In this document: positions 1-34,806 of the stretch, one piece after another
Position numbering within the stretch: position 1 is the stretch's first letter
Layout: each line of letters begins with the position of its first letter
From: Macrostomum lignano
Lineage: Eukaryota
Direction of reading: 5' to 3'
Assembly: GCA_002269645.1 (NCBI GenBank)
Contig: NIVC01003163.1
Coordinates: forward strand, 1-34,806
DNA length: 34,806 nt
Notes under the pieces: generated by a model
Told to the model about the DNA's origin: nothing
The model's database searches: none
The model's input: only the letters and a program-made list of their open reading frames with translations
Made by a program: the position numbers and the translations under genes

Positions 1-122
1 AAACGGACGTCTAGACTTTCAATAAATGACCCCAGTGTTTTGTTAGACTGAGAGAGCCAGCATGATTAAAAAAGCGACTTGCAATTTTGCACGGAGATCA
101 ACTCGTTTATAAATGAAAATTA

Positions 123-1125
123 CAGGTTTGGGTGTTCTCTGGTCCCGAGGGCCACATGCCGCCTGCGAAGCCTCTATCCGGCCCTTGGGTCCTTTGAAAC
201 TTCACAATAGCAGCCCGGCCAGATCAATGTTTGTGCTCTCTTATTTCCTCTCTCCTTTTTTATTCTCTCTCATTTCTCATATCTACTCTCTAGCCTCTCC
301 TCTCTCTGTCCATTCTAGCCTTCCCCTTTTCTCTCTAGCTTCTCCGCTCTCTATTCTGTCTTCTCTAGCCTCTCCCCTTTCCTCTCTAGCCTCTCCCTTT
401 TTCTCTCTAGCCTCTCCCCTTTCCTCTCTAGCCTCTCCCCTTCTCTCTAGCATCTCCCCTTTCTCCCTAGCCTCTCCCCTTTTCTCTCTAGCCCCTCCCC
501 TCTCTCTTCTCTCTAGCCCCTCCCCTTTTCTCTCTAGCCTCTCCCCTTTTCTCTCTAGCCTCTCCCCTTTTCTCTCTAGCCTCTCCCCTTTTCTCTCTAG
601 CCTCTCCCCTTTTCTCTCTAGCCCTCCCCTCTCTCTTCTCTCTAGCCCCTCCTCTCTCCTCTCTAGCCCCTCCTCTCTCCTCTCTAGCCCCTCCTCTCTT
701 TTCTCTACCTCTCCTTTTCTCTCTAGCCCCTCCCCTCTCTCTTCTCTCTAGCATCTCCCCTTTTCTCTCTAGCCCCTCCCCTCTCTCTTCTCTCTAGCCC
801 CTCCTCTCTCCTCTCTAGCCCCTCCCCTTTTCTCTCTAGCCCCTCCCTCTCTCTTCTCTCTAGCCACTCCTCTCTCTCCTCTCTAGCCCCTCCCCTTTTC
901 TCTCTAGCGCCTCCCCTTTTCTCTCTAGCCTCTCCCCTTTTCTCTCTAGCCCTCCCCTCTCTCTAGCCCCTCCCCTCTCTCTTCTCTCTAGCCCCTCCCC
1001 TCTCTCTTTCTCTAGCCTCTCTCTCTTTCTCTCTAGCTTCTCCGCTATCTATTATCTGTCCTCTCTAGCCTCTTCCCTTCTTCTCTTTACTTGGCCCTTG
1101 AGGTAAAAAAGTTTGCCGATCACAG
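123..1125. mobile_element. Degenerate hAT (Charlie-like) MITE-type element with an internal pyrimidine-rich expansion
   Basis: Left end CAGG..GGTCCCGAGGGCCACATGCCGCC and right end GGCCCTTGAGGTAAAAAAGTTTGCCGATCACAG resemble remembered hAT MITE termini (GGGCCACAT.. / ..AAAAAGTTTGCCGACCCCTG). The TIRs are degenerate and no clean 8-bp TSD is visible. Confidence 0.35.
285..1075. repeat. Pyrimidine-rich degenerate minisatellite (CTCTCTAGCCTCTCCCCTTTT-like, ~20-25 bp units)
   Basis: Directly visible tandem units anchored on CTCTAGCC; explains the S/L/P-rich ORF 113-751 and the R/E/G-rich ORF 488-754. Confidence 0.95.
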
Positions 1126-2186
1126 GATTACAGACTTGCTTCTCCAAGACGTATAGCAAAATAAAGCCTTTCCAGATAGTATTCGATGTAATAGATGGAA
1201 TTCGGAGGGACTTCTACCCTATCAAATAATAAAATTTGATATTCATAATTAGACTAAAATTTTTCAGAAACAACAAAAACAAGAAAAAGCTTTCTAGTGA
1301 TATCGGAATCTCACTAAATTGAAGCCTAATGCAAGCCAGATAGGTTATTTCTGTAATCGCAACTACAAGAGATGGCGTCATCCATTTACTCTTTGAACTA
1401 ATGGCATTCGATTGAAATGACAAACCCAGGAAGACAGTGAAGCATCAACCAAAGCAATCAGAAAGCTTTATTGCTTTTAGTATACAGCAACGCGGATTAG
1501 GAATGCTTCGTCAGTAATTAAGCATGAATTGCACAGGGAAAGATGTTAGTTAATCTCCATATAAATTTGACTGTAAAATATCATCAGAAAAAAGTTTCAA
1601 TAAAATCGCATTGCACAGCCCTCAGATACAGAAAACGCGCAGGGACGGAACGAATACAATGTTAAAAAGCAGAATGTTTCACAACAGACCCGCTGGTGAA
1701 CAATGGTAAACAAAAAATTGCACAATTGTATATCACTCAATGTAGACTCAAATTGTCCAGGACGGAACAAAAATTCGACCAGACAGCTCGTAAATATCCG
1801 CCTACCCGCATCAAATAAATAAGTAGCAAGTTGCGGTAAATCAATTCTCCAGTCAACAGAAATTAACCCAAAATGAAAACGGTACCAGGACACAAGAAGC
1901 GTCTCTAAACGACTCAAAAACTACGAGATGACTCATCGTAAAAGACGCCAAAAAGTCGTCAAAGAGTCGCCTAAGAGTCAATTTCTATAGCGCATCTGCG
2001 TCACTGTTTACCAATTAGAATCGCATTTCGCATTTATAACAACTCTATTTAGTCTACTTGAGTTAGTAGTGAGTTTATCGCTAGCACAACAGCTCTCAGA
2101 CGAATTTTTTTGCAACTCAACAGTCGGCCTCTCTGTCGCATTGCAGTCCAACGAGAAACCTAATAGAAAATCGCGCAATAGCATAT

Positions 2187-17941
<15,755 letters not shown>

Positions 17942-18219: not shown

Positions 18220-18467
18220 TAATAATAATAACTGATTACACCTTCCCGAATTGGGCTGAATGTGCAACCAAAAGCTCACCCGCAGATATTGCGCAGCGCA
18301 TCTTAAGGGTTCATATGGCTGTTCAGTCCATTCACTGGGGGGTCGCCACATGCACCCTTAATACCCCAGCTAATGCTGGCACCCATTTTACAGCTGGGTG
18401 AACTAAAGCAATGCAGAGTTAAGTGTCTTGCTCAAGGACACAAATTGTTACAGTGGGATCAGGAATC
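18220..18467 (-). mobile_element. 5'-truncated copy of the same SINE family
   Basis: Colinear with 16487-16745 (TGATTACACC..GCACCCATTTTACAGCTGGGTGAACT..CTTGCTCAAGGACAC..GTGGGATC); truncated within the B box. Confidence 0.85.
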
Positions 18468-20420: not shown

Positions 20421-22192
20421 TAGGACGGAAGGGAAAGGGAAAGGGAAACAAGGTGCGCTTTACGTTGGATTTTTTGGAATCTCTGGAAGTCAGTTCAACA
20501 AAAATGTGCGGAATTTTCCTACCTTCTAAAAATAAGAACAAAAAAGAGAGTTTTCAGTACACCCTAATTAATATCAATATCTTCCTTAACTACTTTAGCT
20601 AGGCCAAAAACCATTTTAGAAAGAATACAGAATCGTTTTGTTTTAAGTGACAAAAGTAAAATTTAACTTTGCACTTAACCATTGTCAGCCATGGGCCTGT
20701 ATGGCCAAATTCAGCAGGCTTTGTCTGAGCCAAACACGTACCAGTACCACATAACTAGGACTACAACCAGATGTGTCTAGCGATTCCCCCTCGGATATGG
20801 ACTATCGAGTCCGGAAAGTGAACGGTCAGTGTCACAGCCCTCTACTGACTGAACGACAACGAGTTGGCCAAGCCTGAGGAAAGGAGCATCTAATTCGCAG
20901 AAAAGCAAAAATTCGTGAGACGCTGGTGCTTCGTCAATGAGTTTCTGCAGTTTTCGCCTCTCGTAGCCATTATGCAGGACTGGAACGCTATAGTTGTTAA
21001 AAAACTAGGCTGCAGATCTCATTTGACTTTACATGTAGTTTCGGTCTCGAAGCAAAAATCTCTTCTTTCACTGCTTTTCTTATTTTATCACTCATAAATT
21101 GCGTTTTATCTTAGAAAGGCGCCGCCGGGGTTCAGTTGCGGGACGAGGCATGTACTAAACTGTGTGGCTGCATGGTTAGTAGCAATTGCATCGAGCGACG
21201 GCTTCTGCTACCTCACACCGTCTCCGACAGTCGGTTGTATGCACACCTCCGAGTCCCCTGATTTTGTTCTTAGCTCCAGTTTGGATACGGAGAGCAGATC
21301 GTTGTGTCAATCTTTTTTATCAGTAGCGTGATCAGTGCAGGCCTAGGTTGCAGAGCGTATCTGTAAGATGAAAAAGTGAATCATGGATGCAGGAAAGCTT
21401 TTTAAAAATGATGCGGGCAGAATAAGTCTATATCTCTGATACCTTGCAGGAACGCAAAATGGCTTCACCCAACGTTTCTCAAAAAATCTAACCAAAGCTT
21501 CACCACCTTTGATATGGACAATGACAACAGCATAGACTCTAGAGCCCGGTGTTATGAAAATTCAATGAAAGCAGAGTTCGAAACCCTGATTACGCGGATT
21601 TGATTGAATGGGTGACTCACAACTCAATACCCATCGACAATAAGCAATGCGAGGATAACAAACAATGCTATATTTTTTCCGCGGGAAGATTGCAATAAAC
21701 TCATCTAGTCTGATGACAGTTATTTAAAGTACAGAACGATTTTCAGTCATTTTAATTTTTGTTGACTTGATTAGCTAGCGTTAGCTTGAATGAGTCTCAG
21801 CGAGAAATTGAACCCAGCGAGGACGTTACGTGTCGGCACAGGCTGAGGTCGCCGTTTTGCCTTGATCGTTCCGCGCTTTCCGAAAGCCAACTGTTTCTGA
21901 ATTAGCTGGAGGCCCACGACAAGTGGTGATTGCTTTCCCTCTGATAAAAAAATCATGAGAAAGAAGGTCCATGAACTAGCTCATGCCATTAACTAACAGG
22001 GTTGATCGAGGTTGCGGCACTCATGATAGTTCATCAGGCCTTGTGTTGACTCACTCAAATATGTCAAGCTACATGCAAATACGTTCTAATGCAATACTAG
22101 ACCTGCATAAAAGATCCCACCCGTAGGAATCCAAGCATGCAAGACCCTCGTGCAGCTATGGACGATTACGGCAAGATATGGGAATTTTCATA

Positions 22193-24414
22193 TGATGTAA
22201 CCACGCTCTGGTCGCGGGATAGGGCATGGGAACTTTTTCGTAAGTGCCTCCTATCCCGTGTACCCCCCTGCACAGAGCCGTCGAGACTCGGCCAGGTTTC
22301 CGACCAGGCCTGGAGACTCCCGCTCTGCTGCACCCCCCTGCTGCCTTGGTTCCGTCTCCCCTGCCGCCACACCTGCCTTTCCGGAGCTCCCTGTCCCTCT
22401 CTGTACCCTCCCCTCTACCTTATCTCCCCTGCACTCCACCCTATTCTTCTGGTACTTCCCCTATCCCCCCCTCTTTTGTCTCTCTCTGCACTCTTTTCTT
22501 GCGCTGTCCCCTCTTTCTCTACGTCTACTTACAGTATGTTGTGTGCTCACCGTCCTCCCATCCTTTCCCAAACTCCCAAACGGTGACGCAAGTCGTGTGA
22601 CCCCTTCTCCCCCCCCCGATGACTCATCGATGACTCACCCCCCTCTCTTGCGCAACCTTTTCTCATGCCATTGTTCTCCTCCCCAAATTTCTCATGCGAC
22701 ACCCACCCCACCTCCGCTTCTATTGTTCTCGTTTTTGATTCTTTTGTTCTCTCGACCCCCACCAATTATCACATTTTCTCCGATTTTCTCTTTCTTTTGT
22801 TCTCGTTTTCGCACCTAATTATCACCTTTTCTCCAATGTTTACTTTTCCATTGTTCTCAGTTTTCCCCAATTATCCCCGATTTCCAATTCCTTTGTTCTC
22901 GACCCCAGCCCTATTGTTCTCAATGTTTGCTTGCGCAACACTTTCGCGACCACCCGCTGCGCCAATTATCCCCCCACCCCACCTCCGGATTGCGCAATTT
23001 CCCGATTTCTCATGTTGCTATGCCGGTCTCATGCTTCTCATCATGACTCATTCTGACGTCATTCTGCCGGCAGCCAATCAGAGAGAGGGAGCCATGGTAA
23101 CGACCTTGAGGAGGCGGCTGTGAGGTCTATAAAAGGAAGCGATTTCGGCATGAGAATCCTCAGCCTGCTCGACTCTTCCTCTCCTCGTCCTTCTTTGGAC
23201 TTGCTGTCAGATTGAGTTCTGACCCATTCGTCTATAAGACGAATCCCTGCCAGTCCGCGGTCTGCTACCGCCAAGTTATCCTTAGCTCCCCAAGTGAGCT
23301 CGCCTATCGGCCAGCGGTCTGATACCGCCCAGCATCATCAGCATCGCCTGATCTACATCAGCGCCTCGTCGCTCCAGCGCATCGCCGCTTCACTGTCTGC
23401 CTGACTGCAGCCTACAGCCACCCTCGGTCACTCCGCCTCTCTCTCTCTCTGTGCAGCTGCCGGTAAGTTCCTGTTACTAATTTGTGCTCTAATTGCCTCT
23501 GCTTATCCGGGGTTTGCCTATTTTCCATTGTCTGATTAGAGAGCTGAGCCAATTGTGATACCGTATCTTTTGCTGTATTTTACTCAATAGTGAAGCCGCC
23601 TAATTGCCTGATTATTCGCCTAAGGGCCTAACTATTAACTATTAACTAACTTCATCATTATTCAATCTTTCACCATCATTTAACTCATGGCTTGCTAAGC
23701 CTTTCTCCCGGGGTGGCAAAGCATAAGGGAGTTTGGGTAAGCTAATGGCCTCTCCCCGTGCAAAGCCCGCCTGTGTGAGTGCGTGCGGCGGGTTCGTGAG
23801 TGCGTGCAGTGGAGGGTGATTAGCGAGTCTTGGCACAGAATGGCAGTAGGAAGGTTGCAACCCCATGCTAACGCGTCCCTTCGCCCTGAGCAATCTAAAC
23901 TATAGACAGTACATGTTCGCCTCATACTACTCTTAGTAATCAAAGTCGCAAGTCAGCCTCGCTCACAGCCACAAAGGACCCCCTGCTGAGAAATCCTCCA
24001 GGATTGAGCACAGAGTTCCCGATCATGCCCCAAGCAGAGTCCCTGTACTCGGCTGCATGCGTCTCCCCTGTTAGCCTAAATCCCCTGGTAACCAATCCAG
24101 GCGGGGCTCTAGCCTCGAGAGGTCTGGTAGAAAGATCCAGGTGCGCCAGGTCACATAGAGTGGTGGCAGCCACTCGGTCATACCATGACCGAGTGACCAA
24201 CTATTGCACCTTGGCTACAGGTGGGGTCCATGTGGGTCCTTGGCCCTCTGGTCACGAAGCGCTACCAAAGCTACTAATCATGTGGGCGGGACAGTCTGGT
24301 GCTGGAGGTCCGTCAGGTCATTGCCCGGTCATAGGCAGCCTACGGTCATCGCCCCCTCTAGCCAAGCGTTCGTCTCTCTATAGGAGCGGACAGGCGACAA
24401 GGGCGGTTACATCA
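22193..24414 (+). mobile_element. Solo LTR (2222 bp), probably Ty3/Gypsy type
   Basis: Starts TGATGTAACC (22193) and ends GGTTACATCA (24414), a perfect 10-bp inverted repeat with TG..CA ends. Flanked by a CATA direct repeat (22189-22192, 24415-24418). Contains an internal + strand promoter and no coding capacity. Confidence 0.8.
22989..23135 (+). promoter_or_regulatory. Pol II promoter inside the LTR: C/EBP, AP-1, CRE, CCAAT and TATA
   Basis: ATTGCGCAAT 22989-22998, TGACTCA 23044-23050, TGACGTCA 23054-23061, AGCCAATCAG with CCAAT at 23074-23078, TATAAAAG 23128-23135, in canonical order and spacing. Extra TGACTCA at 22620 and 22631. Confidence 0.75.
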
Positions 24415-24782
24415 CATAATATGATATGAAAAATATGAAAATATATTGAAAATATTCAATAATATGAAAAAGTACTCATAAATCCTCACATGCACTGGTT
24501 CAGTGGTTTCTATGGTTTTGTGATACGTTTCGATTATTTGCGCTTGAACTGACGAAGGATGCTTGGTTGGTGTAAAACTAAAACGTAAACGGCTGAAAAG
24601 TGGGGGATACAGAGTATTCCCGATTTACCCTTAGTATCTATGGCATAAATGCATAAATAAATGCACAGAATGCATTCGTGTCTTACCAATTGACCCCGGC
24701 TTTGCTTTATAAAGCATGTCGCGCTAATATATTTGTACATGTATTTTATCAAAGCTGTAGGCTACATGTGCATGCATCAACA

Positions 24783-27270
24783 ATGACTTGCTCCGGTACG
24801 CATCCTTATTCCCTTCAAATCGCCCAGACAGCAGTGCCGTCGGGTAGCACCGGAGACGAAGTCAGCAGCTCCAAACGGGCAAACTGCAAAAGCGCGGTTA
24901 TTCTAGCCCATCCGTTTCCTCTAGCTGACGTGGCGGATGCCTTTCGAGATAAGTACAGAGCGTACATTGGCTATACAATTGAAACTGCAGGACAGCGGGA
25001 GCTCACTACTCATATGAGCAAGAATGCAATTGAGTAAGCTTTATTTCACTCGTCTATTTCTATACATTTATTCTTATCCTGCATTGAACAATATTGATAC
25101 TGATAGCTTTCACAAATGAAACTGTTTGGATTAGGGACAGGAGTATGCTCAACCAGTAGTCTGCGCCTGATACCTGAACTGTTGTCATTGTTGCAGCAGA
25201 TATAACTAGCCAACCATAATACTTCAAGTGATCTCGTGCACATACTCCACAAACGAACCAGAAAGAATACGACCGCAATGTCTTCATCATATCACTGCAG
25301 TATGAAAAAGTCAATCGAGTGCCTCGGATTCAGGCGTCTGGACGAAGACATGGCCGAGTGTTTGCTAGCTGATGCCGATAAACTGTCTCTGACCGTTTTG
25401 ACTTCTGGCGACGAGAATCCAGCCATCTGTAAGATATCCGTATGGGGTTTTTGATCAGTACAACACGGTTGATCTATTCGTAAAGTAAAAATCTTAATTT
25501 AGCACTAATAGCTTTTAAAACAAAAATATATTGGATAGCAGAGTAGCATTAGTCATTCAAAATTATATTTTTCTTGAAGGCGGTAATTGATTTTGTAATC
25601 GTTTACTTTGTTCTATTAGTTCTTCTACCCGACTTGGAAAGTAGAAATTAAACCATGTATTGAAAGCTTTTTGTAAAGCTGAGTGGAATAAACTAAAAAG
25701 CGAAATAAGCAGAACGCGATTGGTACAAATCGAATTACTTCTAGCTGGTCCAAGCTTCCTGACAGCAAAGCTGAAGGCCGAGCCGCTCAGCGAAATTCTG
25801 GCCTGCGACTGGCAGCTTCACCAACACCTGCGACAGTTGGAGGAGAAATTGAGCCAAGCCAACATAAGCTTCCTTACTGATTCCGGAAGAGTTTATAATA
25901 TTGAATACTTCCTTCCGTTGGCTGTCTGCATGGCAGATGCCAAACATCTTGAGGAAACCCTCGGTGAGAATTTACGCAAATGAATTCATTGAATTAATGC
26001 GATTTTTGACAAATCTTGTCCGATAAATCATTGCAGCATCTCGACCTGGCAAATATCTGATAAAATCATCCAGGTAAAGTTATATGCGGCAACTAGCAAC
26101 AAAACTGAGAGTTAAATATGAGCATTGACACATGGCAGAGCTGCAGGGCCTTGGCGTGTAGGTTGCGCTGTTAGTACCATGCGAAACGCAGAGTCTGCAT
26201 CCGTCTTCTTGCCAGTGCCTGCAGTGTCATTAGCGACTTCTCCTGCACCGCTTGTGGGCTGTTAACTCTGACTCTGAGTTTTGTTGTGGACCTGTGCGGA
26301 AGCAGTTGCTTGAATAGTGTTCGCTCGTGTTCAATTTCATGACTGGCCTTTTAATTATCTCGTACACTTCAGTGCATTATTTCATTCATCATTTTCTAAA
26401 TCTTTTTAAGCCGACAGTTTACTTTACAGCCAACTTAAAAATAACCTTCCCTCGATTGCCAGCAGAAGTTCGAAACCTCGCCAGCGACAGCTGATTAACG
26501 TCCAAAGCAGCAACTCCGCAAAGGCTATCCGCGACTGCCTTCTCAGCGGGACACCTTTGCAACAAGCGTCGCTACAGGCCTATATTGAGCAGCCACTGCT
26601 GGTTGACAAGCGCAAGTTCGACATCCGCACCTTCTTAATGCTTGTCTGTCCAAAGCGGGGCGGAGCTGGTGGCCGAACAAACGATTCCGGCTACTTCGCC
26701 TTCCACCATCCGGGCTTCCTGCATCTTCGTCTCGAGCCATTCAACCCGCAATATCCGGAGCCTTCGCAAGACGGACCGAAATATCAGACGAGTCAGCAGC
26801 TCATGGAGGCTTGCACATGGTATCCGGACGAGCTCAACGCTTACTTGAACAGAAAAAAAGGCTTCAGAATGCCCCCAGACTGGGTCAAAGTTAGGCTGTA
26901 TCCACAAGCGAGAGCTGTTCTGGGCTACCTAGCTGGCTTGCTTCGATGGAACCTACATGATCGCGTCTCCGCAACCAGCAGCTTCCGCATCATCAGCGCC
27001 CACATGCTTCTGGACGAGAGCCTCAGACTGCACCTGCTGAAGTTGGACGATGATGCGCCAAATTGGAGCCGCCCAACCAGCGTGGTGGACTCCGTGCTGT
27101 CGAGCATTTGGCAGGAGGCTGTCTGTCTCGCATGCGAGATTGCCATCAGATTCAGAAGCGGCAGAACCATCAGCGATGATCACTTGGTAACCAGGCGGAA
27201 CTTTCGCATGGTCTACAGCTCAGAGGATCTGTGTCTCGCCAGACAGAGCGTCACTTTGATGTACGACTGA
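24783..27270 (+). CDS. Tubulin-tyrosine-ligase-like protein, TTLL10-like, with a degenerate active site; 5 exons, ~491 aa
   Basis: Phase-consistent exons 24783-25033, 25301-25428, 25745-25963, 26037-26073, 26430-27270 (1476 nt). TTL-family motifs: LGFRRL (GWQRI-like), FLTAK, IEYFLP (EEFFP-like), YLIKS (WICKP position), QAYIEQPLLVDKRKFDIR, PPDWV, MLLDESLRLHLL. The start codon and exon 5 acceptor are inferred. Confidence 0.8.
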
Positions 27271-27978
27271 TAGAGTTGCATTTCAAGTGTACTTGATAGT
27301 GAAATTTTCTCTTCCTTTTTAGTTTATCGGCCTTGTCTTAAAAATTGTACCATACTACTCGTTTTGCTAAGAGCAGGCATAGGAATAAATGCATGCATTT
27401 ATTGTATCATTCTGTCTTTTTCAATCTAAATAAAGCACTTAGCTGTTCGACTCTTTTCATAAGAGATCTGAATTATGATGATATTTAAATTCTTACGTCT
27501 GAAGACGTATGAAGCTCGCAAATTCGGGAAGTACTTTTAATGACTACGAGGGCCGGGCACGTAGGAAGGGGTTGGGAGAGCGATAACTGTCCAAGATTCT
27601 TTAAGCGATACTCTTGAGGATAGTAGCGTGTTCACGCTTGAAAAAGTCAAATGACTACTATGCGCAGGTGAACTATAGTGGGTAATCATAGGGCTAGAAG
27701 CAGTTGGGTGATTTTCCCACAAAGCCCAGCTTCTCATCTTTTTTGAAGGCTGATTACTTCAATTTGAAGGTGAACAATATTGAGGTTATTAGAGTTAGAG
27801 GTTATTACGAGTAACTCAAATTTAGTAAGACAAGGAGCCTCCTCTCTGCGTCTATTACTTTATTGTAGTTTATTTAAAGACACATAATTGCTTCCACAAT
27901 TGTTCCAGTAACGAGTTAATCAAGTCCTATTTCAGCTTTATCATATCAGCCTAGCATAAGCTCTGCAGCTCGTATGCC

Positions 27979-28670
27979 TCATTCAGCCATCCAGATGTCG
28001 TCACTTACATGTATTTCGCCGCTCAAGGCGGTGGCAAAGCTGTTGAGGTGTCAGAGGCCGCTGCTGCCGTTGAAGCAATACGGGGACTTGACCAGACTCT
28101 TCGCCATGCGAGCTCAGCCCAGAGAGAGGTTGCAAATTCCGCAGCTGGGATGAGCGGATGGGCGGCGGAGGCGGTGACCTTGTGAAATCGACGGCCCTGG
28201 GAGCCTGCATGCAATGTGGGAAACGTATGGACAGAATACACTACATTTCACAGACGGAAAGTGAGTGAGAGTGAACATTCTCACAGATGGAATTTCTCTT
28301 GACTAAACCGTAAAAGCCGCATTTCCAGTGCAATAATCGTCTTTGCACTCCAGACCCTGTTGCTGAACCGCAGGAGCCGTAGCAGGAGCCACACTAATAG
28401 TAAAGGCCTGTCTGCACGCCTTCGTATCGAAAACCGCCGTACAGATCAAACATCGTGTCTCCTCTGGACAAGATCACCTGTCTATCGTAGTTAAATATAA
28501 ACGGGCCGATCTGGTCGATGCCGGCAAGACCCCGCAAGTCTCTGTTAGATTGGTCAATGAGGCAGCTGGCAAAGACTCTAATGGCCTTCGCTGCCCCAGC
28601 AACTCGCGGAGACTAGCAGAACGGCCACTGCAACAGCTGCCCAAGCAGCGAGGACTCTGATGTGGCTCAT
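27979..28670 (-). pseudogene. WSC-PAN paralog A, heavily decayed
   Basis: ATG at 28670 and signal peptide, then a net frameshift near QRKA giving an early TAG. The shifted frame reads SCLIDQSNRDLRGLAGIDQIG..YGGFRY with the TVxLCSxIC segment deleted and an in-frame stop. Exon 2 (27979-28204) is homologous to the PAN exon but degenerate. Confidence 0.75.
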
Positions 28671-29350
28671 ATCTTTCAGTGTTAAACTTATTTGTTGACT
28701 GAATTGAACCATGTTATTTATTACATGCCTTTCCGCACAGGATGGATGTTAAGCAAAGGCAAAAAATACACTGGAAGGAAGCTGCGCAATGCACGGTCAA
28801 ACATTCTAATTTGGCAACCATATAATACAGAGACAGAAACCTTTAAAACATTGATTATAAATGCAGTATGCAAATCCCTAACCCCTATCATCCCGTCTTT
28901 CAGAACTATTAGACCAAATATTGTCAATTCAATGGGTTAAGCAAGGCTGTTACTGTTTAGAGTCAGTTATATTAAATTCGAAAAAGCTATAAAAAATCCA
29001 TCAGATCGATTCTACAAGTATTGCAACTAGACCGACCATATTTGGCTAGTCTAGGATTATTCTGGGATTTATTCTCACTTCTGTTAGAAAACAAAACCAA
29101 CAAAAATACATTCTTTTTTTATTTTCACAGATTTAAAGGTCTGAATTGTGTTTGCAATTGTATTTGTCGTAAATAGCTGCAAAAGTCTCTCTCTTATTAG
29201 TATTTATTATTGCACTCGAATCTAATAGTTAGTATTTCATTTGTGCCTTCGTCACCGAGTTCATGCACTGATTCAAAAAGTTAGCCAGCATAGTCTTCAG
29301 TCAAATCAGGAACAAAAAACTTATCCCAGCGCATCCTGGACTTCAGGGCT

Positions 29351-30095
29351 TCAGCCGACGATCCAGACATCGCCAGTCTCCTTGTCGAATGCGGTGGCGA
29401 AGCTTCTGAGGCGGCAGAGGCCGCTGCTGCTGTTGAAGCAATAGGAGGAGGAGCTGGCAGTCCGGGCGCAGGCGCACTGCATCAGGCTCTGCGCCTTGAC
29501 GTCCCAGCCCAGGGTGCCAGTGGCGACCAGCTTTGGAGCGACAGAGGTGGCGAACTTGCGAAAGCGAGTATTTTGCAAAGCTGAAATAGAATTTTTTAAG
29601 GGCATAAAGCTCACTTTTCTCTATTGTAGCTTATTAATAAAAATCTAACACTTCTCGACATACTCTCTCGATGAGTACACATTTTCATAGATGGACTTTT
29701 GCAAACGACCTCCGCAAACCTGGCTAGCATTCCCGTAGCAATTCGTGTTTCACTCGGACTCTGGCGCTGGACCCCAGGAGCCGTAGCTGAAGTCGCACGA
29801 GCAGAAGCCGTAATCCTGCACCGCAGTGAATCGGAAACCACCGTAGGTGCAGATTTCACTGCACAGCTCCACCGTCATAGCAAGTCCAAGCATTCGATAC
29901 CTTCTCTGGAATACTTGACTCTGAATGAGGCAAATTCTGCGATGCCAGCAAGGCCCCCAATGTCTCTGTTTAGTGCGTCTTTGTCAACAAAGCAGCCGAC
30001 ATAGACGGGAGTGGCTTTGCGCTGGCACAGTGACTCGGAAGCCGAACAAGCGGAACAACTTGCAGCATAGTCATTTGCGGCGACTGAGATGTGCT
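29351..30095 (-). pseudogene. WSC-PAN paralog B, decayed
   Basis: ESLCQRKATPVYVGCFVDK is recognisable but has no in-frame ATG/signal peptide; frameshift near 29880; PESEC changed to PESE-stop (TGA); donor GT changed to GA near 29668. Exon 2 (29351-29580) has small deletions and lost Cys. Confidence 0.8.
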
Positions 30096-31035
30096 TAGCA
30101 GCTTGGCAGGAAAGTAATGTTGCTCACAAGTTCTTATAGATGTCAAACTGCATTGATAATAGGATCGCGTCTAAAACACCAATATTCATTGCTTTCATGG
30201 GCTAATGGCCCCGACCTGGAGACACAAAAAAACGAATTGACGAAGTGTATAATGTTGATCAAGTTTGCATGCCTTCTCCAAATAAAATTGACCCAGGAAG
30301 AATGAGATACTGGCTAATAGACTCGAGAAAAATTCGAAAAAAAAGAGATAAAAAGTCAGGGTATTGGCTTGATTGTGCAAGTTCTAGTTGTCCACGATGG
30401 CATACCGAGATGAGAGGTTGCGAAATGGAACGATGAACTAACAAAGTCGGGGGTAGTAGCCTCATCAAAACAAGCTGAAAAGCACGGTAAATTGATCAGA
30501 TTGACAAGCACTGCCCAGAATGAGTAAACATAAGCTAAGCTAAGCTAAATTAATTTAGGGTAATCTGATGCGCGCTACCTTCAAGGTCAGCAACGTCATA
30601 AGTTGCTTTAGAGAGGGAAAGAGTAGAAGTATTGTTTTAACACTTCGTAATTAAGTTTCCAAAGACTCTCTGAGTCTGGAGTCAGGGGTGCTGCAACTGC
30701 AGACAGAGAGTGTTGAATGCCTCCAGTGCCAGCTCATGAATCAGAATCCATCAGCCAGCTTTCATGTAATTAGGTGAGAAGCTCATCAAACTGGATTCTC
30801 AAGTTACTCCGCATCTTCTTTCATTTTTGCTTTACTTTGAAAATGCAACGATAGCCGTTTACCGTAGAATGAAAAAGAAGAAAAATAAAAATCTATGATA
30901 AAAACCAATTAAAACTTAACTTGCAAATGTCTTTGCTTTCTAACCAAAATTTATTATCAATTTCAAGTAGTTGGTCTGACAGGATTCCAAAAAACACAAT
31001 GGGAAATCGAGTCATCGAAATCGGGCTCCGAGGCT

Positions 31036-31896
31036 TCAGCCGATTATCCAGACATCGCCAGTCTCCTTGTCGAATGCGGTGGCAAAGTTGCTGAGGCGGC
31101 AGAGGCCGCTGCTGCTGTTGAAGCGATACGAGGAGCAGCTGGCAGTCCGGGAGCAGGTGGCGGCGCAATCGATCCGGCTCTGCGTCTTGACGTCCCAGCC
31201 GAGGGAGCCGGCGAATTCGGCAGTGGTGACCAGGTTTGGAGCGGCAGAGGCGGCGAACTTGCGGAAACGATGTACCTTGGATCCTGAAAGTTGTTTTTTG
31301 CATTCGAGCTTGTTGGCAAATGTTTCAGGATAGTCTCAGCTTTCTCGTGCTTTACGAGCTTAAGTTGTACATTTAACCTGGTCGAGTGGAATTTTGTACT
31401 TTTTTGATCCCGGATGCATGAAAAAACTATTAGCTTTTAGTAAACCAGATCGGAATCCGAAAAAATTGTGCTCACCCGAGAAGGTACTCTTGTAGATCGA
31501 AGCCCGCAGAGAACTACCGCACACCTGACCATGATTGCCAGAGCAAGGATTGCTGCACTCGGCTTCCGGAGCGGAACCCCAGGAGCCGTAGCTGGAGTCG
31601 CACATGCATTCATTACTATTCTGCACTGCGGCGTATTGAAAGCCACCGTAAATGCAGATTTCGCTGCACAGATCCACAGTCATGTCATGTCTGGACACGA
31701 TGCCTTGGCTTGGGTGTAAGACACTGTATATGCCAAGCTGGGCAACACCAACAAGTCCCAGCATGTCTCTGTCGGGTGGAAGTTTGTCAACGAAGCAGCC
31801 GACGTAGACCGGAGTGGCCTTGCGCTGGCACAGCGACTCACCGGCCAGCAGAGCAACAGCCAGAACATTCGCTAGCACGGAGAGTCTGCTCAACAT
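31036..31896 (-). CDS. Secreted WSC + PAN/apple domain protein (paralog C, intact, 222 aa)
   Basis: Exon 1 31476-31896: signal peptide MLSRLSVLANVLAVALLAGESLC and WSC pattern YVGCFVD..MTVDLCSEIC..FQYAAVQNSNECMCD..ECSNPCSGNHGQVCG..SIY. Phase-1 GT-AG intron. Exon 2 31036-31283: PAN/apple pattern CAATCSRTASCSSYRFNSSSGLCRLS, ending DVWIIG-stop. Confidence 0.88.
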
Positions 31897-32525
31897 GGTT
31901 TGTAGAATAGGTGGGGGTGGTCGATTTTGCTGTCTGTGACTCTTTCTTGTATTGCCTAATGTAGCCTTGATGGCGCCTGTCAAACTGTTTCATGACTTTA
32001 TAGATCAGCTCAGGCTGAGGCTTTCTGAAAGATTTCTTTCTCTATGCAGGAAGTTTGCCAGGCCGCATTGTCTGTGCGGTGGTCGCTGATGATTGATGCC
32101 GATGAGCTGAAACTGCGGGAGCAAACCGGATGGATTGAATGAGAGACAGAAGCTCTCGGTTAAATTTGTCCGCTCAGTAAGAAGAAGGAAAAGCAAGTCG
32201 ATAAAGCTGTCTTACAATCATCGATTGAAAAGCAGTAAAAAATAATAGGACTAATTTAGGAAAAGATTTGAACCAATCGCCTAGGAAATCAAGCTCCTCG
32301 GACTCGCTATTAACAACAATTACAATTTTTGGGCATAGCAACAATATTCACGAGGCAGTGTATTTTAAGACATTACATGATCAGCACATAACCACACGCT
32401 TTACCTCGTTCGAGATTCGGGAAGTCGCCAACACAACAGTATCAATAGCACAGACAATTGTCAATGCCATATGAATGAATTATAGATCCGAACTCACTTT
32501 ATATTACTCTATAGGATTTTAAGGG

Positions 32526-32665
32526 TGGCTAGAATAGAGCACAGCGGACTAGAATTCAGTACAGGTGGCTAGAGTAGAGCACAGATGGCTAGAGTAGAGT
32601 ACCGGTGGCTAGAGTAGAGCACAGATGGCTAGAGTAGAGAACAGGGGGCTAGAGTAGAGCACAGA
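32526..32665. repeat. 20-bp minisatellite (GGCTAGAGTAGAGCACAGAT), ~6 copies
   Basis: Direct tandem units between paralogs C and D. Confidence 0.85.
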
Positions 32666-32765
32666 AAGAAAACTCGTAGACAAGTTTTTACTCATTAACT
32701 ATGTCTGCAGTACTTGAACTGGTTTCAGATTCGTTTCTCGCCAAGCTAAAGCCAGTTGCCAAAGT

Positions 32766-33587
32766 TCAAGTTGCAATCCAGACGTCGCCGGTCTCATTCG
32801 CCAAAGCGACGGCGAAGTTGCTGAGGCGGCAGAGGCCGCTGCTGCTGTTGAAGCGATAGGAAGAGCAGCTGGCAGTCCGGGCGCAGGAGGCTGCGCACTG
32901 CATCCGGCTCTGCGCCTTGACGTCCCAGCCCAGGGAGCCGGCGAATTTGGCAGTGGTGACCAGCGGAGGGGAGGCAGAGGCGGCGAGCTTGCTAAATTCA
33001 CGGCCATGGAAGTCTGCAACAAATACATAACCAGTTTTTTCAAAATCAGTACAAGGGTTGTACTTTTACTTTTGCATCGGAAAAATTGCTTTAGTCGCTG
33101 CCACTTAATCTTTTTGGGAATTTTTTGGGAAAAAGGATAAAAAATACTGGAATTTCCTCTCACTTGATGGGTACACATTCTCGTAGATTGAGTTCCTGTA
33201 CGCTCCACCGCACATCTGCTTAACGTTCCCGAGGCAGTGCTGGTTACACTCAGTCTCTGGCGCGGGACCCCAGGAGCCGTAGCTGGAGTCGCACGAGCAG
33301 GTGGCATAATTCTGTAAGGCGGCGAACCGGAAGCCGCCGTAGCTGCAAATTTTGCTGCACAGCTCAGCTGTCATGTCGGACCTGGACAGAATTCCCTGCG
33401 TGATGTAGGTGACGCTGAATGGGCCGAGCTGGGCGATGCCAACGAGGCCCTACATGTCTCTGTTTGGCGGAGCTTTGTCTCTGAAGCAGCCCGCGTAGAC
33501 CGGAGTGACTTTGCGCTGGCACAGCGACTTGGAGACCAGCAGAGCCACCACTACAGCAGCCGTTGCTGCAGAGAGTCTGGGACGCAT
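32766..33587 (-). pseudogene. WSC-PAN paralog D, intact apart from one in-frame TAG
   Basis: Exon 1 33164-33587 (MRPRLSAATAAVVVALLVSKSLCQRK..) has TAG at 33450-33452 where paralog C has Leu (RDM-stop-GLVG versus RDMLGLVG). All WSC Cys, splice sites and exon 2 (32766-33013, PAN domain) are intact. Confidence 0.8.
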
Positions 33588-34806
33588 GGAATGCGGTTGT
33601 TGTCACTTGCGCGACCGTAAAATTTCAGGTCACTATCGCAGTAAAGAGGGTCTAGATTGTCTCAGTCTCTTTTGCTTTTCTGATGGAGTGGGATAAAGGC
33701 AGCACTTCATAGTTCGTTTTATACTTTTTTCCTGGCTTCTTTCGATGTTAAGAATAATAGACGGCAGCGGTGTGTTGTAGCCAGCAGTCAATAGAATCCC
33801 GTGTTTTAAACTAGTGGGTTCACGAGTAACTTTATTGATTGATAGAATCGAATTCAATGCTGCTGATAGACATGCTAGAAACATGCCATGAGAATTATCT
33901 GCAGTCCTGGTATCATTTGGTATCTTTCCCAAGGTATTCAGTGACAGAACAGGCAAAAAATTCCACCCTAGAGGTTCAAATTTCTCCATTTTCCAGTAGA
34001 TTTCGTGAAACAATACGTTGAAAAGTGCCAGCATTTCAGCAAAGTTCGTCTATCCTTCGAAAAAAATTGTCCACCTCCATCCTTCAGTCTCGCGCGCGAC
34101 CGATTTCTGATTGCATTCTGATTTGGCATTGCATGCTCTGCGAGAGTATTTCATGCACAGTTTGGTTAATTTCAAAGTGATTCCCTGAATAGTATCTGGT
34201 TAAAAATCTTGTCGATAAAAATTTAGTCATACGAGTAACAAGCAATTTAATTTTTTGATAAAAAATCTCATTTAGGGAAGCAACCGTTGAATTCATGGAG
34301 ATTGGGTGTCTTAGCCACACACTAAACAGTAGAAAATAGCTAAGCCAAAATAGCTAACTTCATAGTGAAGTTAGACATACCTGTCTGTCGCTGAAATAAG
34401 GTGAGAGTCTCAAGTCAGACTCGAAACATTACTGAGAAGCGCCACTCACACTACTGGAAAAACAATATTTTAAAAGTAGTCATCGTTTAGAACAGCAGTT
34501 CGCAGCACAAAAGTCAAGAACGTAACAAAAGGAACGGCAACCAGCGTATCTAAGGATGTCTAGAAGGAGCCACAGAGGTATAGAGGAGGATCCGTCCGGT
34601 TTTGTGCCGAGAGTACATCGTCATGTTAGCGTAAATCAGCTAATGGGAGTACCTGACGGGAGTACGGGCTTTTCAAGGTGGGTGGACATCCAGTCTATGT
34701 CGCCGATGAAGGCACCCACTGTTTATTAATATGCCATTCGCAGAACTCGAATACATTGGATTACGAGAAATCTACGAGTAGTTTTAGACAAGATGGCACT
34801 TTTTTT

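What the first reader, a model, noticed from the sequence alone, without database searches (positions are those of the whole stretch)
22193..24783. Solo LTR positioned as a promoter and first exon for the downstream TTLL-like gene
Seen: the LTR promoter (C/EBP, AP-1, CRE, CCAAT, TATA at 23128) faces the TTLL-like gene, and the LTR ends ~370 bp before the inferred ATG. A consensus donor CCG|GTAAGT lies at 23462/23463, and an acceptor (CTGTAG|) lies at 24760, 22 nt upstream of the ATG, with no other obvious partner exon. Inference: an LTR-initiated non-coding exon (~23157-23462) splices to 24761, placing the gene under bZIP (stress or wound) control, i.e. TE exaptation.
Basis: partly seen in the sequence, partly recalled or inferred. 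Interest (0 to 1): 0.7.

Follow-up and report, generated by a model that had tools for sequence, protein, structure and literature searches.

The report
Probable solo LTR upstream of flatworm gene
A 2.2-kb transposon remnant, probably a lone retrotransposon LTR with an intact-looking promoter, sits just upstream of a degenerate tubulin-ligase-like gene in the flatworm Macrostomum lignano; nothing available here shows that it drives that gene, and the proposed splice link is weak.

Summary
The window comes from Macrostomum lignano, identified through the gene's own protein and its paralogs. The described features are all at the stated coordinates.

- **Element:** 22193-24414, with 10-bp terminal inverted repeats (TG...CA) and a 4-bp target duplication (CATA).
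- **Promoter:** a very non-random cluster of bZIP palindromes, plus a CCAAT box and a TATA box at 23128.
- **Splice sites and start codon:** GTAAGT at 23463, an AG at 24760 and the ATG at 24783.

A transposon insertion facing the TTL-family gene is well supported, and "solo LTR" is the best reading. It stays unproven: I could reach no second copy, the element has no AATAAA or ATTAAA, and 1.25 kb lies downstream of the TATA.

The exaptation model is not supported by sequence. I scored the sites with a matrix built from 30 verified M. lignano introns.

- The donor at 23462 is average, and four others nearby score as well or better.
- The acceptor at 24760 falls in the bottom 10-13% of real acceptors and ranks 15th-20th of 79 AGs.

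M. lignano SL trans-splices 30-39% of its genes, and a 368-bp AT-rich spacer with its own TATAAAG lies between the element and the ATG. No transcript data were reachable. Verdict: an ordinary TE-near-gene arrangement and a testable but unproven promoter candidate. Low interest.

The parts
22189..22192 (.). Left copy of the 4-bp target-site duplication (CATA)
   Evidence: Read directly; the pairing with 24415-24418 was found by the scan.
22193..24414 (+). 2222-bp transposable element, most likely a solo LTR (U3 about 22193-23157; transcribed part about 23157-24414)
   Evidence: It has TG...CA ends, a 10-bp perfect terminal inverted repeat and a 4-bp duplication, the only such pair in the window. 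Composition steps at both ends. The flanks show no PBS or PPT, and no long ORF lies nearby. No second copy was found in the window or in 160 kb of other M. lignano loci.
22193..22202 (+). 5' terminal inverted repeat TGATGTAACC
24405..24414 (+). 3' terminal inverted repeat GGTTACATCA
24415..24418 (.). Right copy of the target-site duplication (CATA)
22620..23081 (+). Enhancer and proximal-promoter cluster: 3 TGACTCA, 1 TGACGTCA, 3 TTGCGCAA, 7 WTTGTTCTC, 4 AATTATC, 3 TTCTCATG on this strand, a 53-bp tandem (22760-22875) and the CCAATCA box at 23074
   Evidence: Positions come and the tandem. Enrichment is P<0.0005 against 2000 dinucleotide shuffles.
23128..23135 (+). TATA box (TATAAAAG), the only TATAAA in the element; it implies a start site near 23155-23160
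   Evidence: Its spacing to the CCAAT box (54 bp upstream) and the CRE/AP-1 sites (74-84 bp upstream) is typical promoter geometry; this is read from the sequence.
23151..23686 (+). 537-nt stretch without any ATG, starting right after the TATA box; a candidate 5' leader
   Evidence: It is the longest ATG-free run on the + strand outside the tandem arrays. P is about 0.002 by composition-preserving shuffle.
23463..23468 (+). Proposed splice donor CCG|GTAAGT
   Evidence: It scores 8.5 bits on a matrix built from 30 verified M. lignano introns, which is the median of real donors.
23737..23801 (+). Three further consensus donors inside the element (TGG|GTAAGC 23737, TGT|GTGAGT 23775, TTC|GTGAGT 23796), all scoring above 23463
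   Evidence: 10.8, 9.6 and 10.0 bits.
24755..24760 (+). Proposed acceptor CTGTAG|, the last AG before the ATG; it could equally be an SL trans-splice site
   Evidence: It scores 1.9-3.2 bits, in the bottom 10-13% of real acceptors, and ranks 15-20 of 79 AGs. 26 of 30 real acceptors are CAG. The published trans-splice motif is [T/C]TNCAG (PMC8629364).
24415..24782 (+). 368-bp AT-rich spacer between the element and the ATG; candidate native proximal promoter with TATAAAG at 24708-24714 (75 nt before the ATG)
   Evidence: Read; GC is 27-42%; it holds 15 ATGs. A promoter function is inferred, not shown.
24766..24786 (+). 6-codon upstream ORF (ATGTGCATGCATCAACAATGA) whose stop overlaps the main ATG
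24783..25033 (+). TTL-family gene, coding exon 1 (start codon 24783)
   Evidence: It matches UniRef A0A1I8JLN1 (P0002) from residue 1. The N-terminal length of paralog P0003 agrees.
25301..27270 (+). Remaining coding exons: 25301-25428, 25745-25963, 26037-26073 (37-nt micro-exon) and 26466 (or 26463/26430)-27270 including the stop codon
   Evidence: The micro-exon is conserved in the gene structures of the paralogs. Pfam TTL scores 27.5 bits.

Best explanation
The segment 22193-24414 is a transposable-element insertion in the genome of the flatworm Macrostomum lignano. It is most likely a solo LTR left by LTR-LTR recombination of a Ty3/Mdg4-type retrotransposon; a 4-bp duplication and a long LTR fit the Gmr1/Osvaldo kind. 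It lies in sense orientation 368 bp upstream of the start codon of a divergent, probably catalytically dead, TTL-family paralog.

The element keeps what looks like the family's own Pol II promoter: a dense array of bZIP palindromes and other repeated motifs, a CCAAT box and a TATA box. This is followed by a 537-nt ATG-free leader and several consensus splice donors.

Shown: the ends, the duplication, the motif cluster, the orientation, the distance and the gene's start codon.

Inferred: the LTR class and the activity of the promoter.

My reading is that this is a TE that happens to sit in the gene's upstream region and could act as an enhancer or alternative promoter. I think the mature 5' end of the TTL mRNA is most likely made inside the 368-bp spacer, either from a proximal start site (candidate TATAAAG at 24708) or by SL trans-splicing at an AG just before the ATG. 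Any LTR-initiated read-through RNA would then mostly be processed away, by internal splice sites or as an outron. It would not contribute a defined 23157-23462 first exon joined to 24761.
For: - **Organism and gene start:** P0002 (UniRef A0A1I8JLN1, M. lignano) is 100% identical over the last exon and starts at the same Met. Paralogs PAA47748 and others are from M. lignano.
- **TE ends:**; composition steps at both ends.
- **Solo state:** no PBS or PPT at the flanks, no long ORFs within 4 kb upstream, and no second LTR in the window.
- **Promoter architecture:**; ATG-free leader.
- **Species background:** LTR retrotransposons make up 21% of this genome, are mostly Ty3/Mdg4, and their LTR promoters work in vivo (PMC5730564, PMC12801592).
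- **The element is in another copy of the locus:** a second assembled copy also carries it, because the UniRef model P0071 contains peptides encoded at 23297-23398 and 23938-24078 (97% and 91% identity).
- **Weak support for the specific junction:** the acceptor at 24760 scores 1.9-3.2 bits, in the bottom 10-13% of 30 verified acceptors, and 26 of those 30 are CAG. Four donors score at least as well as 23462, and 14-19 AGs score better as acceptors.
- **Trans-splicing is common:** 30-39% of M. lignano genes are SL trans-spliced (PMC5730564, PMC8629364).
Against: - No other copy of the element could be found, so its repeat status and LTR class are unproven. Searches of viral and metagenome contigs and of 160 kb of M. 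lignano loci were all negative. The genome itself could not be searched.
- The architecture is odd for an LTR. About 1.25 kb lies downstream of the TATA, and there is no AATAAA or ATTAAA on either strand.
- The spacer promoter is only a TATA-like word in AT-rich DNA.
- The leader downstream of 24760 carries two upstream ATGs under every model.
- The sense orientation, the intact promoter, the ATG-free leader and the consensus donor are what an LTR-driven alternative first exon would need, so that reading is not excluded.
- The splice matrix rests on only 30 introns from one gene family.
Confidence: 0.55

Rival explanations
1. Transcription starts in the LTR at about 23157. A non-coding exon 23157-23462 is cis-spliced to 24761, giving a chimeric mRNA and placing the TTL-like gene under the LTR's bZIP-type control.
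For: The element is in sense orientation and has a textbook promoter. The candidate exon has no ATG. The donor CCG|GTAAGT is of median quality for the species. 24760 is the last AG before the ATG. LTR-initiated chimeric transcripts are common in mammals and Drosophila (PMC13408016, PMC10620055).
Against: The acceptor is a TAG site with a poor context, in the bottom 10-13% of real acceptors and ranked 15-20 of 79 AGs. Strong acceptors inside the element (23968, 24001, 24100; 6.6-7.8 bits) lie between the donor and 24760. Four other donors score as well or better. Two out-of-frame ATGs follow the acceptor. There is no transcript evidence. The only gene model that uses LTR sequence (P0071) uses different, non-consensus junctions and is visibly chimeric.
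Confidence: 0.1
2. The LTR is a real promoter or enhancer for the gene but leaves no defined LTR exon. LTR-initiated read-through pre-mRNA is resolved by SL trans-splicing at or near 24760, so the LTR part is discarded as an outron. Alternatively other LTR donors (23736, 23774, 23795) are used, or the LTR acts only as an enhancer on a start site in the spacer.
For: The promoter looks intact and there is no canonical poly(A) signal anywhere in the element, so read-through into the gene is plausible. 30-39% of genes in this species are SL trans-spliced, and an unpaired acceptor near the 5' end is enough for this (PMC8629364, PMC5730564). Regulatory elements in this species are mostly proximal, within 2 kb (PMC5730564).
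Against: 24760 does not match the published trans-splice motif [T/C]TNCAG. The SL ends in ATG, which would be out of frame with 24783 and open a uORF of about 30 codons (PMC8629364 and the sequence). There is no expression data. In the one study of this species, only two solo LTRs of heat-inducible families lay within 2 kb of host genes, and those genes were only mildly induced (PMC12801592).
Confidence: 0.2
3. The segment is not an LTR. It is either another class of mobile element with short terminal inverted repeats and a 4-bp duplication, for example a non-autonomous DNA transposon. Or it is no TE at all but a native promoter with upstream non-coding exons, and the inverted repeat plus duplication is a coincidence.
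For: The end signature arises somewhere in 9% of shuffled windows. No second copy was found. There is no poly(A) signal, and the part downstream of the TATA is unusually long.
Against: The ends coincide with sharp composition boundaries. TG...CA ends with a 4-bp duplication are the LTR/integrase signature. The element has no transposase remnant and no homology to known proteins. The promoter faces inward from one end, as in a U3 region. LTR retrotransposons are the dominant TE class in this genome (PMC5730564).
Confidence: 0.12

Closest known systems
LTR-initiated chimeric transcripts (solo LTRs as alternative promoters) in mammals and Drosophila, e.g. ERV LTRs in mouse oocytes (PMC13408016) and TE-gene chimeras in Drosophila (PMC10620055)
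   Same: A sense-oriented LTR with its own promoter and a splice donor lies upstream of a host gene. The proposed mechanism, LTR start site and donor joined to a host acceptor, is the same.
   Different: There is no transcript evidence here. The host acceptor is weak. The organism trans-splices a third of its genes, which offers another way to process read-through RNA.
Heat-inducible HSE-bearing LTR retrotransposons of M. lignano (Mag, CsRN1, Gmr1/Osvaldo families; PMC12801592)
   Same: Same species. They are LTRs with a TATA-containing promoter and stress-factor binding sites, and the promoter activity of an isolated LTR was shown by transgenesis.
   Different: This element has no canonical or even two-unit HSE. 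Its motifs are bZIP-type palindromes. Its family is unknown, and membership in any of the 137 described families could not be tested.
Osvaldo/Ulysses-type Ty3/Mdg4 elements with LTRs of 1-2 kb and 4-bp target duplications (from my own knowledge, not checked here)
   Same: Long LTR (2.2 kb), TG...CA ends, 4-bp duplication. The Gmr1/Osvaldo clade has 40 families in M. lignano (PMC12801592).
   Different: No internal region or sequence homology is available, so this is a resemblance only.
SL trans-splicing outrons in M. lignano (PMC8629364)
   Same: An AG lies a few nucleotides upstream of the ATG, with a long upstream region that would be discarded.
   Different: The site is CTGTAG, not the enriched [T/C]TNCAG. 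No SL-read data are available for this gene.

Membership tests
Solo LTR of an LTR retrotransposon | TG...CA termini with short terminal inverted repeats | tested here: met
   TGATGTAACC...GGTTACATCA, a perfect 10-bp repeat.
Solo LTR of an LTR retrotransposon | 4-6-bp target-site duplication directly flanking the ends | tested here: met
   CATA/CATA. The combined end signature arises by chance in 9% of shuffled windows.
Solo LTR of an LTR retrotransposon | Sequence homology to the paired LTRs of a full-length element, i.e. a multi-copy family | not testable with these tools
   No eukaryotic genome collection is searchable here. There was no copy in the window, in 160 kb of other M. lignano loci, or in viral or metagenome contigs. 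The supplements of PMC12801592 are not held.
Solo LTR of an LTR retrotransposon | U3-R-U5 layout with a promoter and a polyadenylation signal | tested here: inconclusive
   The promoter is clearly present. There is no AATAAA or ATTAAA on either strand, and 1.25 kb lies downstream of the TATA.
Solo LTR of an LTR retrotransposon | No adjoining PBS, PPT or gag-pol (solo state) | tested here: met
   The flanks were read. No ORF longer than 95 aa lies between 18.1 and 22.1 kb. The ORFs inside the element have no Pfam hit.
Exapted LTR promoter with a chimeric first exon | Sense orientation upstream of the host gene's first coding exon | tested here: met
   The TATA at 23128 faces the ATG at 24783. 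The start codon is confirmed by P0002 and the paralogs.
Exapted LTR promoter with a chimeric first exon | Transcripts that start in the LTR and join LTR sequence to host exons | not testable with these tools
   No RNA data could be reached. Exact look-ups of the gene's products and of LTR ORFs found nothing. The only model containing LTR sequence (P0071) is 5'-partial and chimeric and uses non-consensus donors.
Exapted LTR promoter with a chimeric first exon | A competent donor-acceptor pair for the proposed junction | tested here: inconclusive
   The donor scores 8.5 bits, the median of real donors. The acceptor scores 1.9-3.2 bits, in the bottom 10-13% of real sites, and many better sites compete.
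TTL/TTLL (tubulin tyrosine ligase-like, ATP-grasp) | Match to Pfam PF03133 above the gathering score | tested here: met
   27.5 bits against a cut-off of 20.1, but only profile positions 68-124 match. Paralog P0003 scores 93 bits.
TTL/TTLL (tubulin tyrosine ligase-like, ATP-grasp) | Conserved ATP-grasp motifs shared by the paralogs (HLTNQ; LLE-x-N) | tested here: not met
   Alignment A1 shows HLTNQ deleted and LLEFN replaced by LLKLDDD. The protein is related to TTL enzymes but is probably not an active ligase.
SL trans-spliced gene of M. lignano | An acceptor matching [T/C]TNCAG shortly upstream of the start codon, plus SL-containing reads | tested here: inconclusive
   The last AG before the ATG is CTGTAG (T instead of C at position -3). 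SL reads are not available (PMC8629364).

The most novel reading that the evidence does not exclude
The LTR is the working promoter of this TTL paralog, but the evidence is erased from the mature mRNA. Transcription starts at about 23157, reads through because the element has no poly(A) signal, and the whole LTR-derived 5' part is removed as an outron by SL trans-splicing just upstream of the ATG. If this were general, SL trans-splicing animals could co-opt TE promoters without needing compatible cis splice sites, and such exaptations would be systematically invisible in standard transcript annotations.
Probability: 0.1. Interest if true: 0.55.

Novelty: new member of a known kind. Interest (0 to 1): 0.2.

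Why it matters
If the LTR really drove the gene, it would be a first concrete case of LTR-promoter co-option in a free-living flatworm that is open to transgenesis. It would also be a handle on how TE promoters interact with SL trans-splicing.

As it stands it is one of very many LTR fragments lying near genes in a genome that is 21% LTR retrotransposon, next to a degenerate member of an expanded gene family. Its practical value is as a well-defined candidate promoter for a reporter test: bZIP palindromes, a CCAAT box, a TATA box and an ATG-free leader.

Tried and rejected
**Searches that found nothing**
- Two word-indexed protein searches failed to find the organism. The only hit was a 30% Phytophthora match that first misled me towards stramenopiles. 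The full HMMER search and the cluster look-up corrected this to M. lignano.
- I searched for other copies of the element by exact LTR words in viral contigs and metagenome contigs. The 36 metagenome hits were 19-22-nt chance matches.
- BLAST of the element against the rest of the window and against 160 kb of M. lignano loci fetched through TTL paralogs found nothing.
- The supplements of the M. lignano LTR paper are not held.
The homeologous locus and transcript contigs could therefore not be fetched.

**Ideas I dropped**
- I first thought 23463-23590 was a better intron internal to the LTR. Its acceptor scores -2.1 bits on the species matrix.
- I considered that P0071 showed real splicing from the LTR into the gene. 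It is a 5'-partial, chimeric model with non-consensus donors that skips the true ATG and runs antisense through the WSC genes.
- I looked for heat-shock elements like those of known M. lignano LTRs. There are none.
- The bacterial promoter/terminator scanner was not used, because it does not apply to this organism.

Full report
**Where the window comes from**

The window is eukaryotic.
- A multi-exon CC2D2A-like gene lies on the minus strand at 2.9-13.5 kb. Its introns are packed with 21-36-bp minisatellites.
- A TTL-domain gene lies on the plus strand at 24.8-27.3 kb.
- A tandem array of WSC-domain genes lies on the minus strand at 28-33.6 kb.

Two word-indexed protein searches found almost nothing. 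A full HMMER search with the last TTL exon then returned a 451-aa protein that is 100% identical over that exon, plus a set of paralogs. The cluster look-up names them all as Macrostomum lignano. This is a free-living flatworm whose genome is about 21% LTR retrotransposon and 15% tandem repeat. [quoted passage not shown]

**Checking the observation**

- The segment 22193-24414 (2222 bp) begins with TGATGTAACC and ends with GGTTACATCA, a perfect 10-bp inverted repeat with TG...CA ends. It is flanked by CATA on both sides.
- A scan for this signature (TG..CA, inverted repeat of at least 10 bp, perfect 4-6-bp duplication, 0.2-8 kb apart) finds only this pair in the window. The signature appears somewhere in 9% of block-shuffled windows, so alone it is suggestive and not decisive.
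- It gains weight because both ends coincide with composition steps, most sharply at 24414, where roughly 60% GC drops to 27%.
- Upstream of the TATA box at 23128 there are three TGACTCA, one TGACGTCA and three TTGCGCAA palindromes. That is 7 sites against 0.16 expected, reached by 0 of 2000 dinucleotide shuffles.
- The same region holds seven same-strand WTTGTTCTC repeats, four AATTATC, three TTCTCATG, and a CCAATCA box 54 bp before the TATA.
- Directly after the TATA comes a 537-nt stretch without a single ATG (23151-23686). It is the longest such run on this strand outside the tandem arrays, with P about 0.002.

Together this is a convincing Pol II promoter plus leader facing the TTL gene.

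**Is it a solo LTR?**

For:
- TG...CA ends and a 4-bp duplication.
- A promoter placed like a U3 region.
- No primer-binding site or polypurine tract at the flanks.
- No internal coding sequence nearby.
- A genome dominated by Ty3/Mdg4 elements whose LTR promoters are known to work (PMC12801592).

Against, or open:
- I could not find a second copy anywhere I could look: the window, 160 kb of other M. lignano loci, viral contigs or metagenome contigs.
- The genome itself is not searchable with these tools, so the defining test, homology to paired LTRs, remains undone.
- The layout is unusual, with about 1.25 kb downstream of the TATA and no AATAAA or ATTAAA on either strand.

One indirect point comes from the UniRef gene model A0A1I8HJ37 (P0071). 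It derives from another assembled copy of this locus and contains peptides encoded at 23297-23398 and 23938-24078 (97% and 91% identical). The element is therefore present upstream of the gene in at least one other copy, allele or assembly.

**The gene and its start**

Mapping P0002 to the window gives the ATG at 24783 as the start.

My refined gene model has five coding exons. One is a 37-nt micro-exon (26037-26073) that sits at the same place in three paralogs.

The protein is a degenerate family member. The HLTNQ motif is deleted and LLE-x-N has become LLKLDDD. Pfam TTL scores only 27.5 bits, against 93 bits for a paralog.

**The splice model**

I mapped seven protein-to-genome models exactly and collected 30 verified M. 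lignano introns. 26 of the 30 acceptors are CAG, and 23 of the 30 donors are GTGAG or GTAAG. These figures agree with the published consensus (PMC8629364). I scored the candidate sites against matrices built from these introns.
- The donor at 23462 scores 8.5 bits, the median of real donors under leave-one-out scoring.
- Donors at 23736, 23795, 23774 and 23293 score 9.1-10.8 bits.
- The acceptor at 24760 (CTGTAG) scores 1.9-3.2 bits. That is the bottom 10-13% of real acceptors, ranked 15th-20th of the 79 AGs between the donor and the ATG.
- Acceptors at 23968, 24001 and 24100, inside the element, score 6.6-7.8 bits.

The junction 23462^24761 is therefore possible but not singled out by the sequence. 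Two out-of-frame ATGs (24766, 24772) follow the acceptor and form a 6-codon uORF that overlaps the main ATG.

P0071 does join LTR sequence to the gene, but it is not evidence for splicing.
- It uses non-consensus donors (GTCTGC, GTTAGC).
- It skips the true ATG and lacks a start codon.
- It continues antisense through the WSC genes.

It is a poor-quality chimeric model that looks like a prediction and not like a transcript.

**Alternatives that fit the species**

Between the element and the ATG lies a 368-bp AT-rich spacer with a TATAAAG 75 nt before the ATG. This is a candidate native promoter, though such words are common in AT-rich DNA.

Because M. lignano trans-splices a third of its genes, the AG at 24760 could instead be an SL acceptor. 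It lacks the enriched [T/C]TNCAG motif, and the SL's terminal ATG would be out of frame (PMC8629364).

An SL-capped mRNA without LTR reads would not exclude an LTR promoter, since the LTR part would be removed as an outron. The absence of any poly(A) signal in the element makes read-through plausible.

**Verdict**

The 'TE insertion with an intact promoter facing the gene' part is well supported. 'Solo LTR' is the best but unproven class. 'Promoter and first exon for the gene' is an untested hypothesis whose specific junction is weakly supported.

LTR-initiated chimeric transcripts are a well-known phenomenon (PMC13408016, PMC10620055). Functional LTR promoters, and solo LTRs lying near host genes, have already been reported in this species (PMC12801592). 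The arrangement is an ordinary candidate and not a discovery.

The decisive data already exist publicly for this organism: RAMPAGE, SL-read tracks, long reads and a genome-wide BLAST.

Noticed in passing
window 16504-16801 and 18235-18467: A repeat of about 300 bp contains a tRNA-like segment (Rfam tRNA hit at 16729-16798, minus strand). Copies 85-92% identical occur in unrelated M. lignano loci (L038 twice, L039), so it is probably an abundant tRNA-derived SINE.
   Followed up: partly
window 26466-27270 (last TTL exon): The TTL-like protein has lost motifs shared by all its paralogs: HLTNQ is deleted, LLEFN has become LLKLDDD and GxD has become SAH. The reading frame is intact across five exons, so it is probably a catalytically dead paralog of an expanded M. 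lignano TTL family.
   Followed up: partly
window 26037-26073: A 37-nt micro-exon encoding PGKYLIKSS is conserved in position in the paralogs (L038 13511-13547, L040 12512-12548, L043 11724-11760). The public model A0A1I8JLN1 skips it and uses a non-consensus donor at 25917.
   Followed up: yes
window 23297-24078, 24828-27261 and 27970-33700: UniRef A0A1I8HJ37 ('Mab-21 domain-containing protein', 1010 aa) is a chimeric, 5'-partial gene model. It strings together LTR-derived peptides, the TTL gene and the antisense strand of the WSC gene array. Its start inside the element may mark a contig break at a repeat in the older assembly.
   Followed up: partly
window 24766-24786: A six-codon upstream ORF (MCMHQQ*) has a TGA stop that overlaps the main start codon (ATGA). 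It would be present in the mRNA under almost any model of the 5' end.
   Followed up: no
window 28000-33600, minus strand: There are three to four tandem units of about 1.7 kb encoding secreted WSC-domain proteins (Pfam WSC 9e-16), 63-87% identical to each other at the DNA level.
   Followed up: no
window 1-16000: The introns of the CC2D2A-like ciliary gene are filled with long minisatellite arrays. Examples are 34 bp x 51 copies at 6025-7796 and 31 bp x 75 copies at 13531-15931. This fits the 15% tandem-repeat content reported for this genome.
   Followed up: no
window 22670-22921: Seven same-strand copies of WTTGTTCTC (a Sox/HMG-like core) are interleaved with four AATTATC and the TTCTCATG words. 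Part of this lies within a 53-bp tandem duplication. It looks like a modular enhancer of unknown specificity inside the element.
   Followed up: partly
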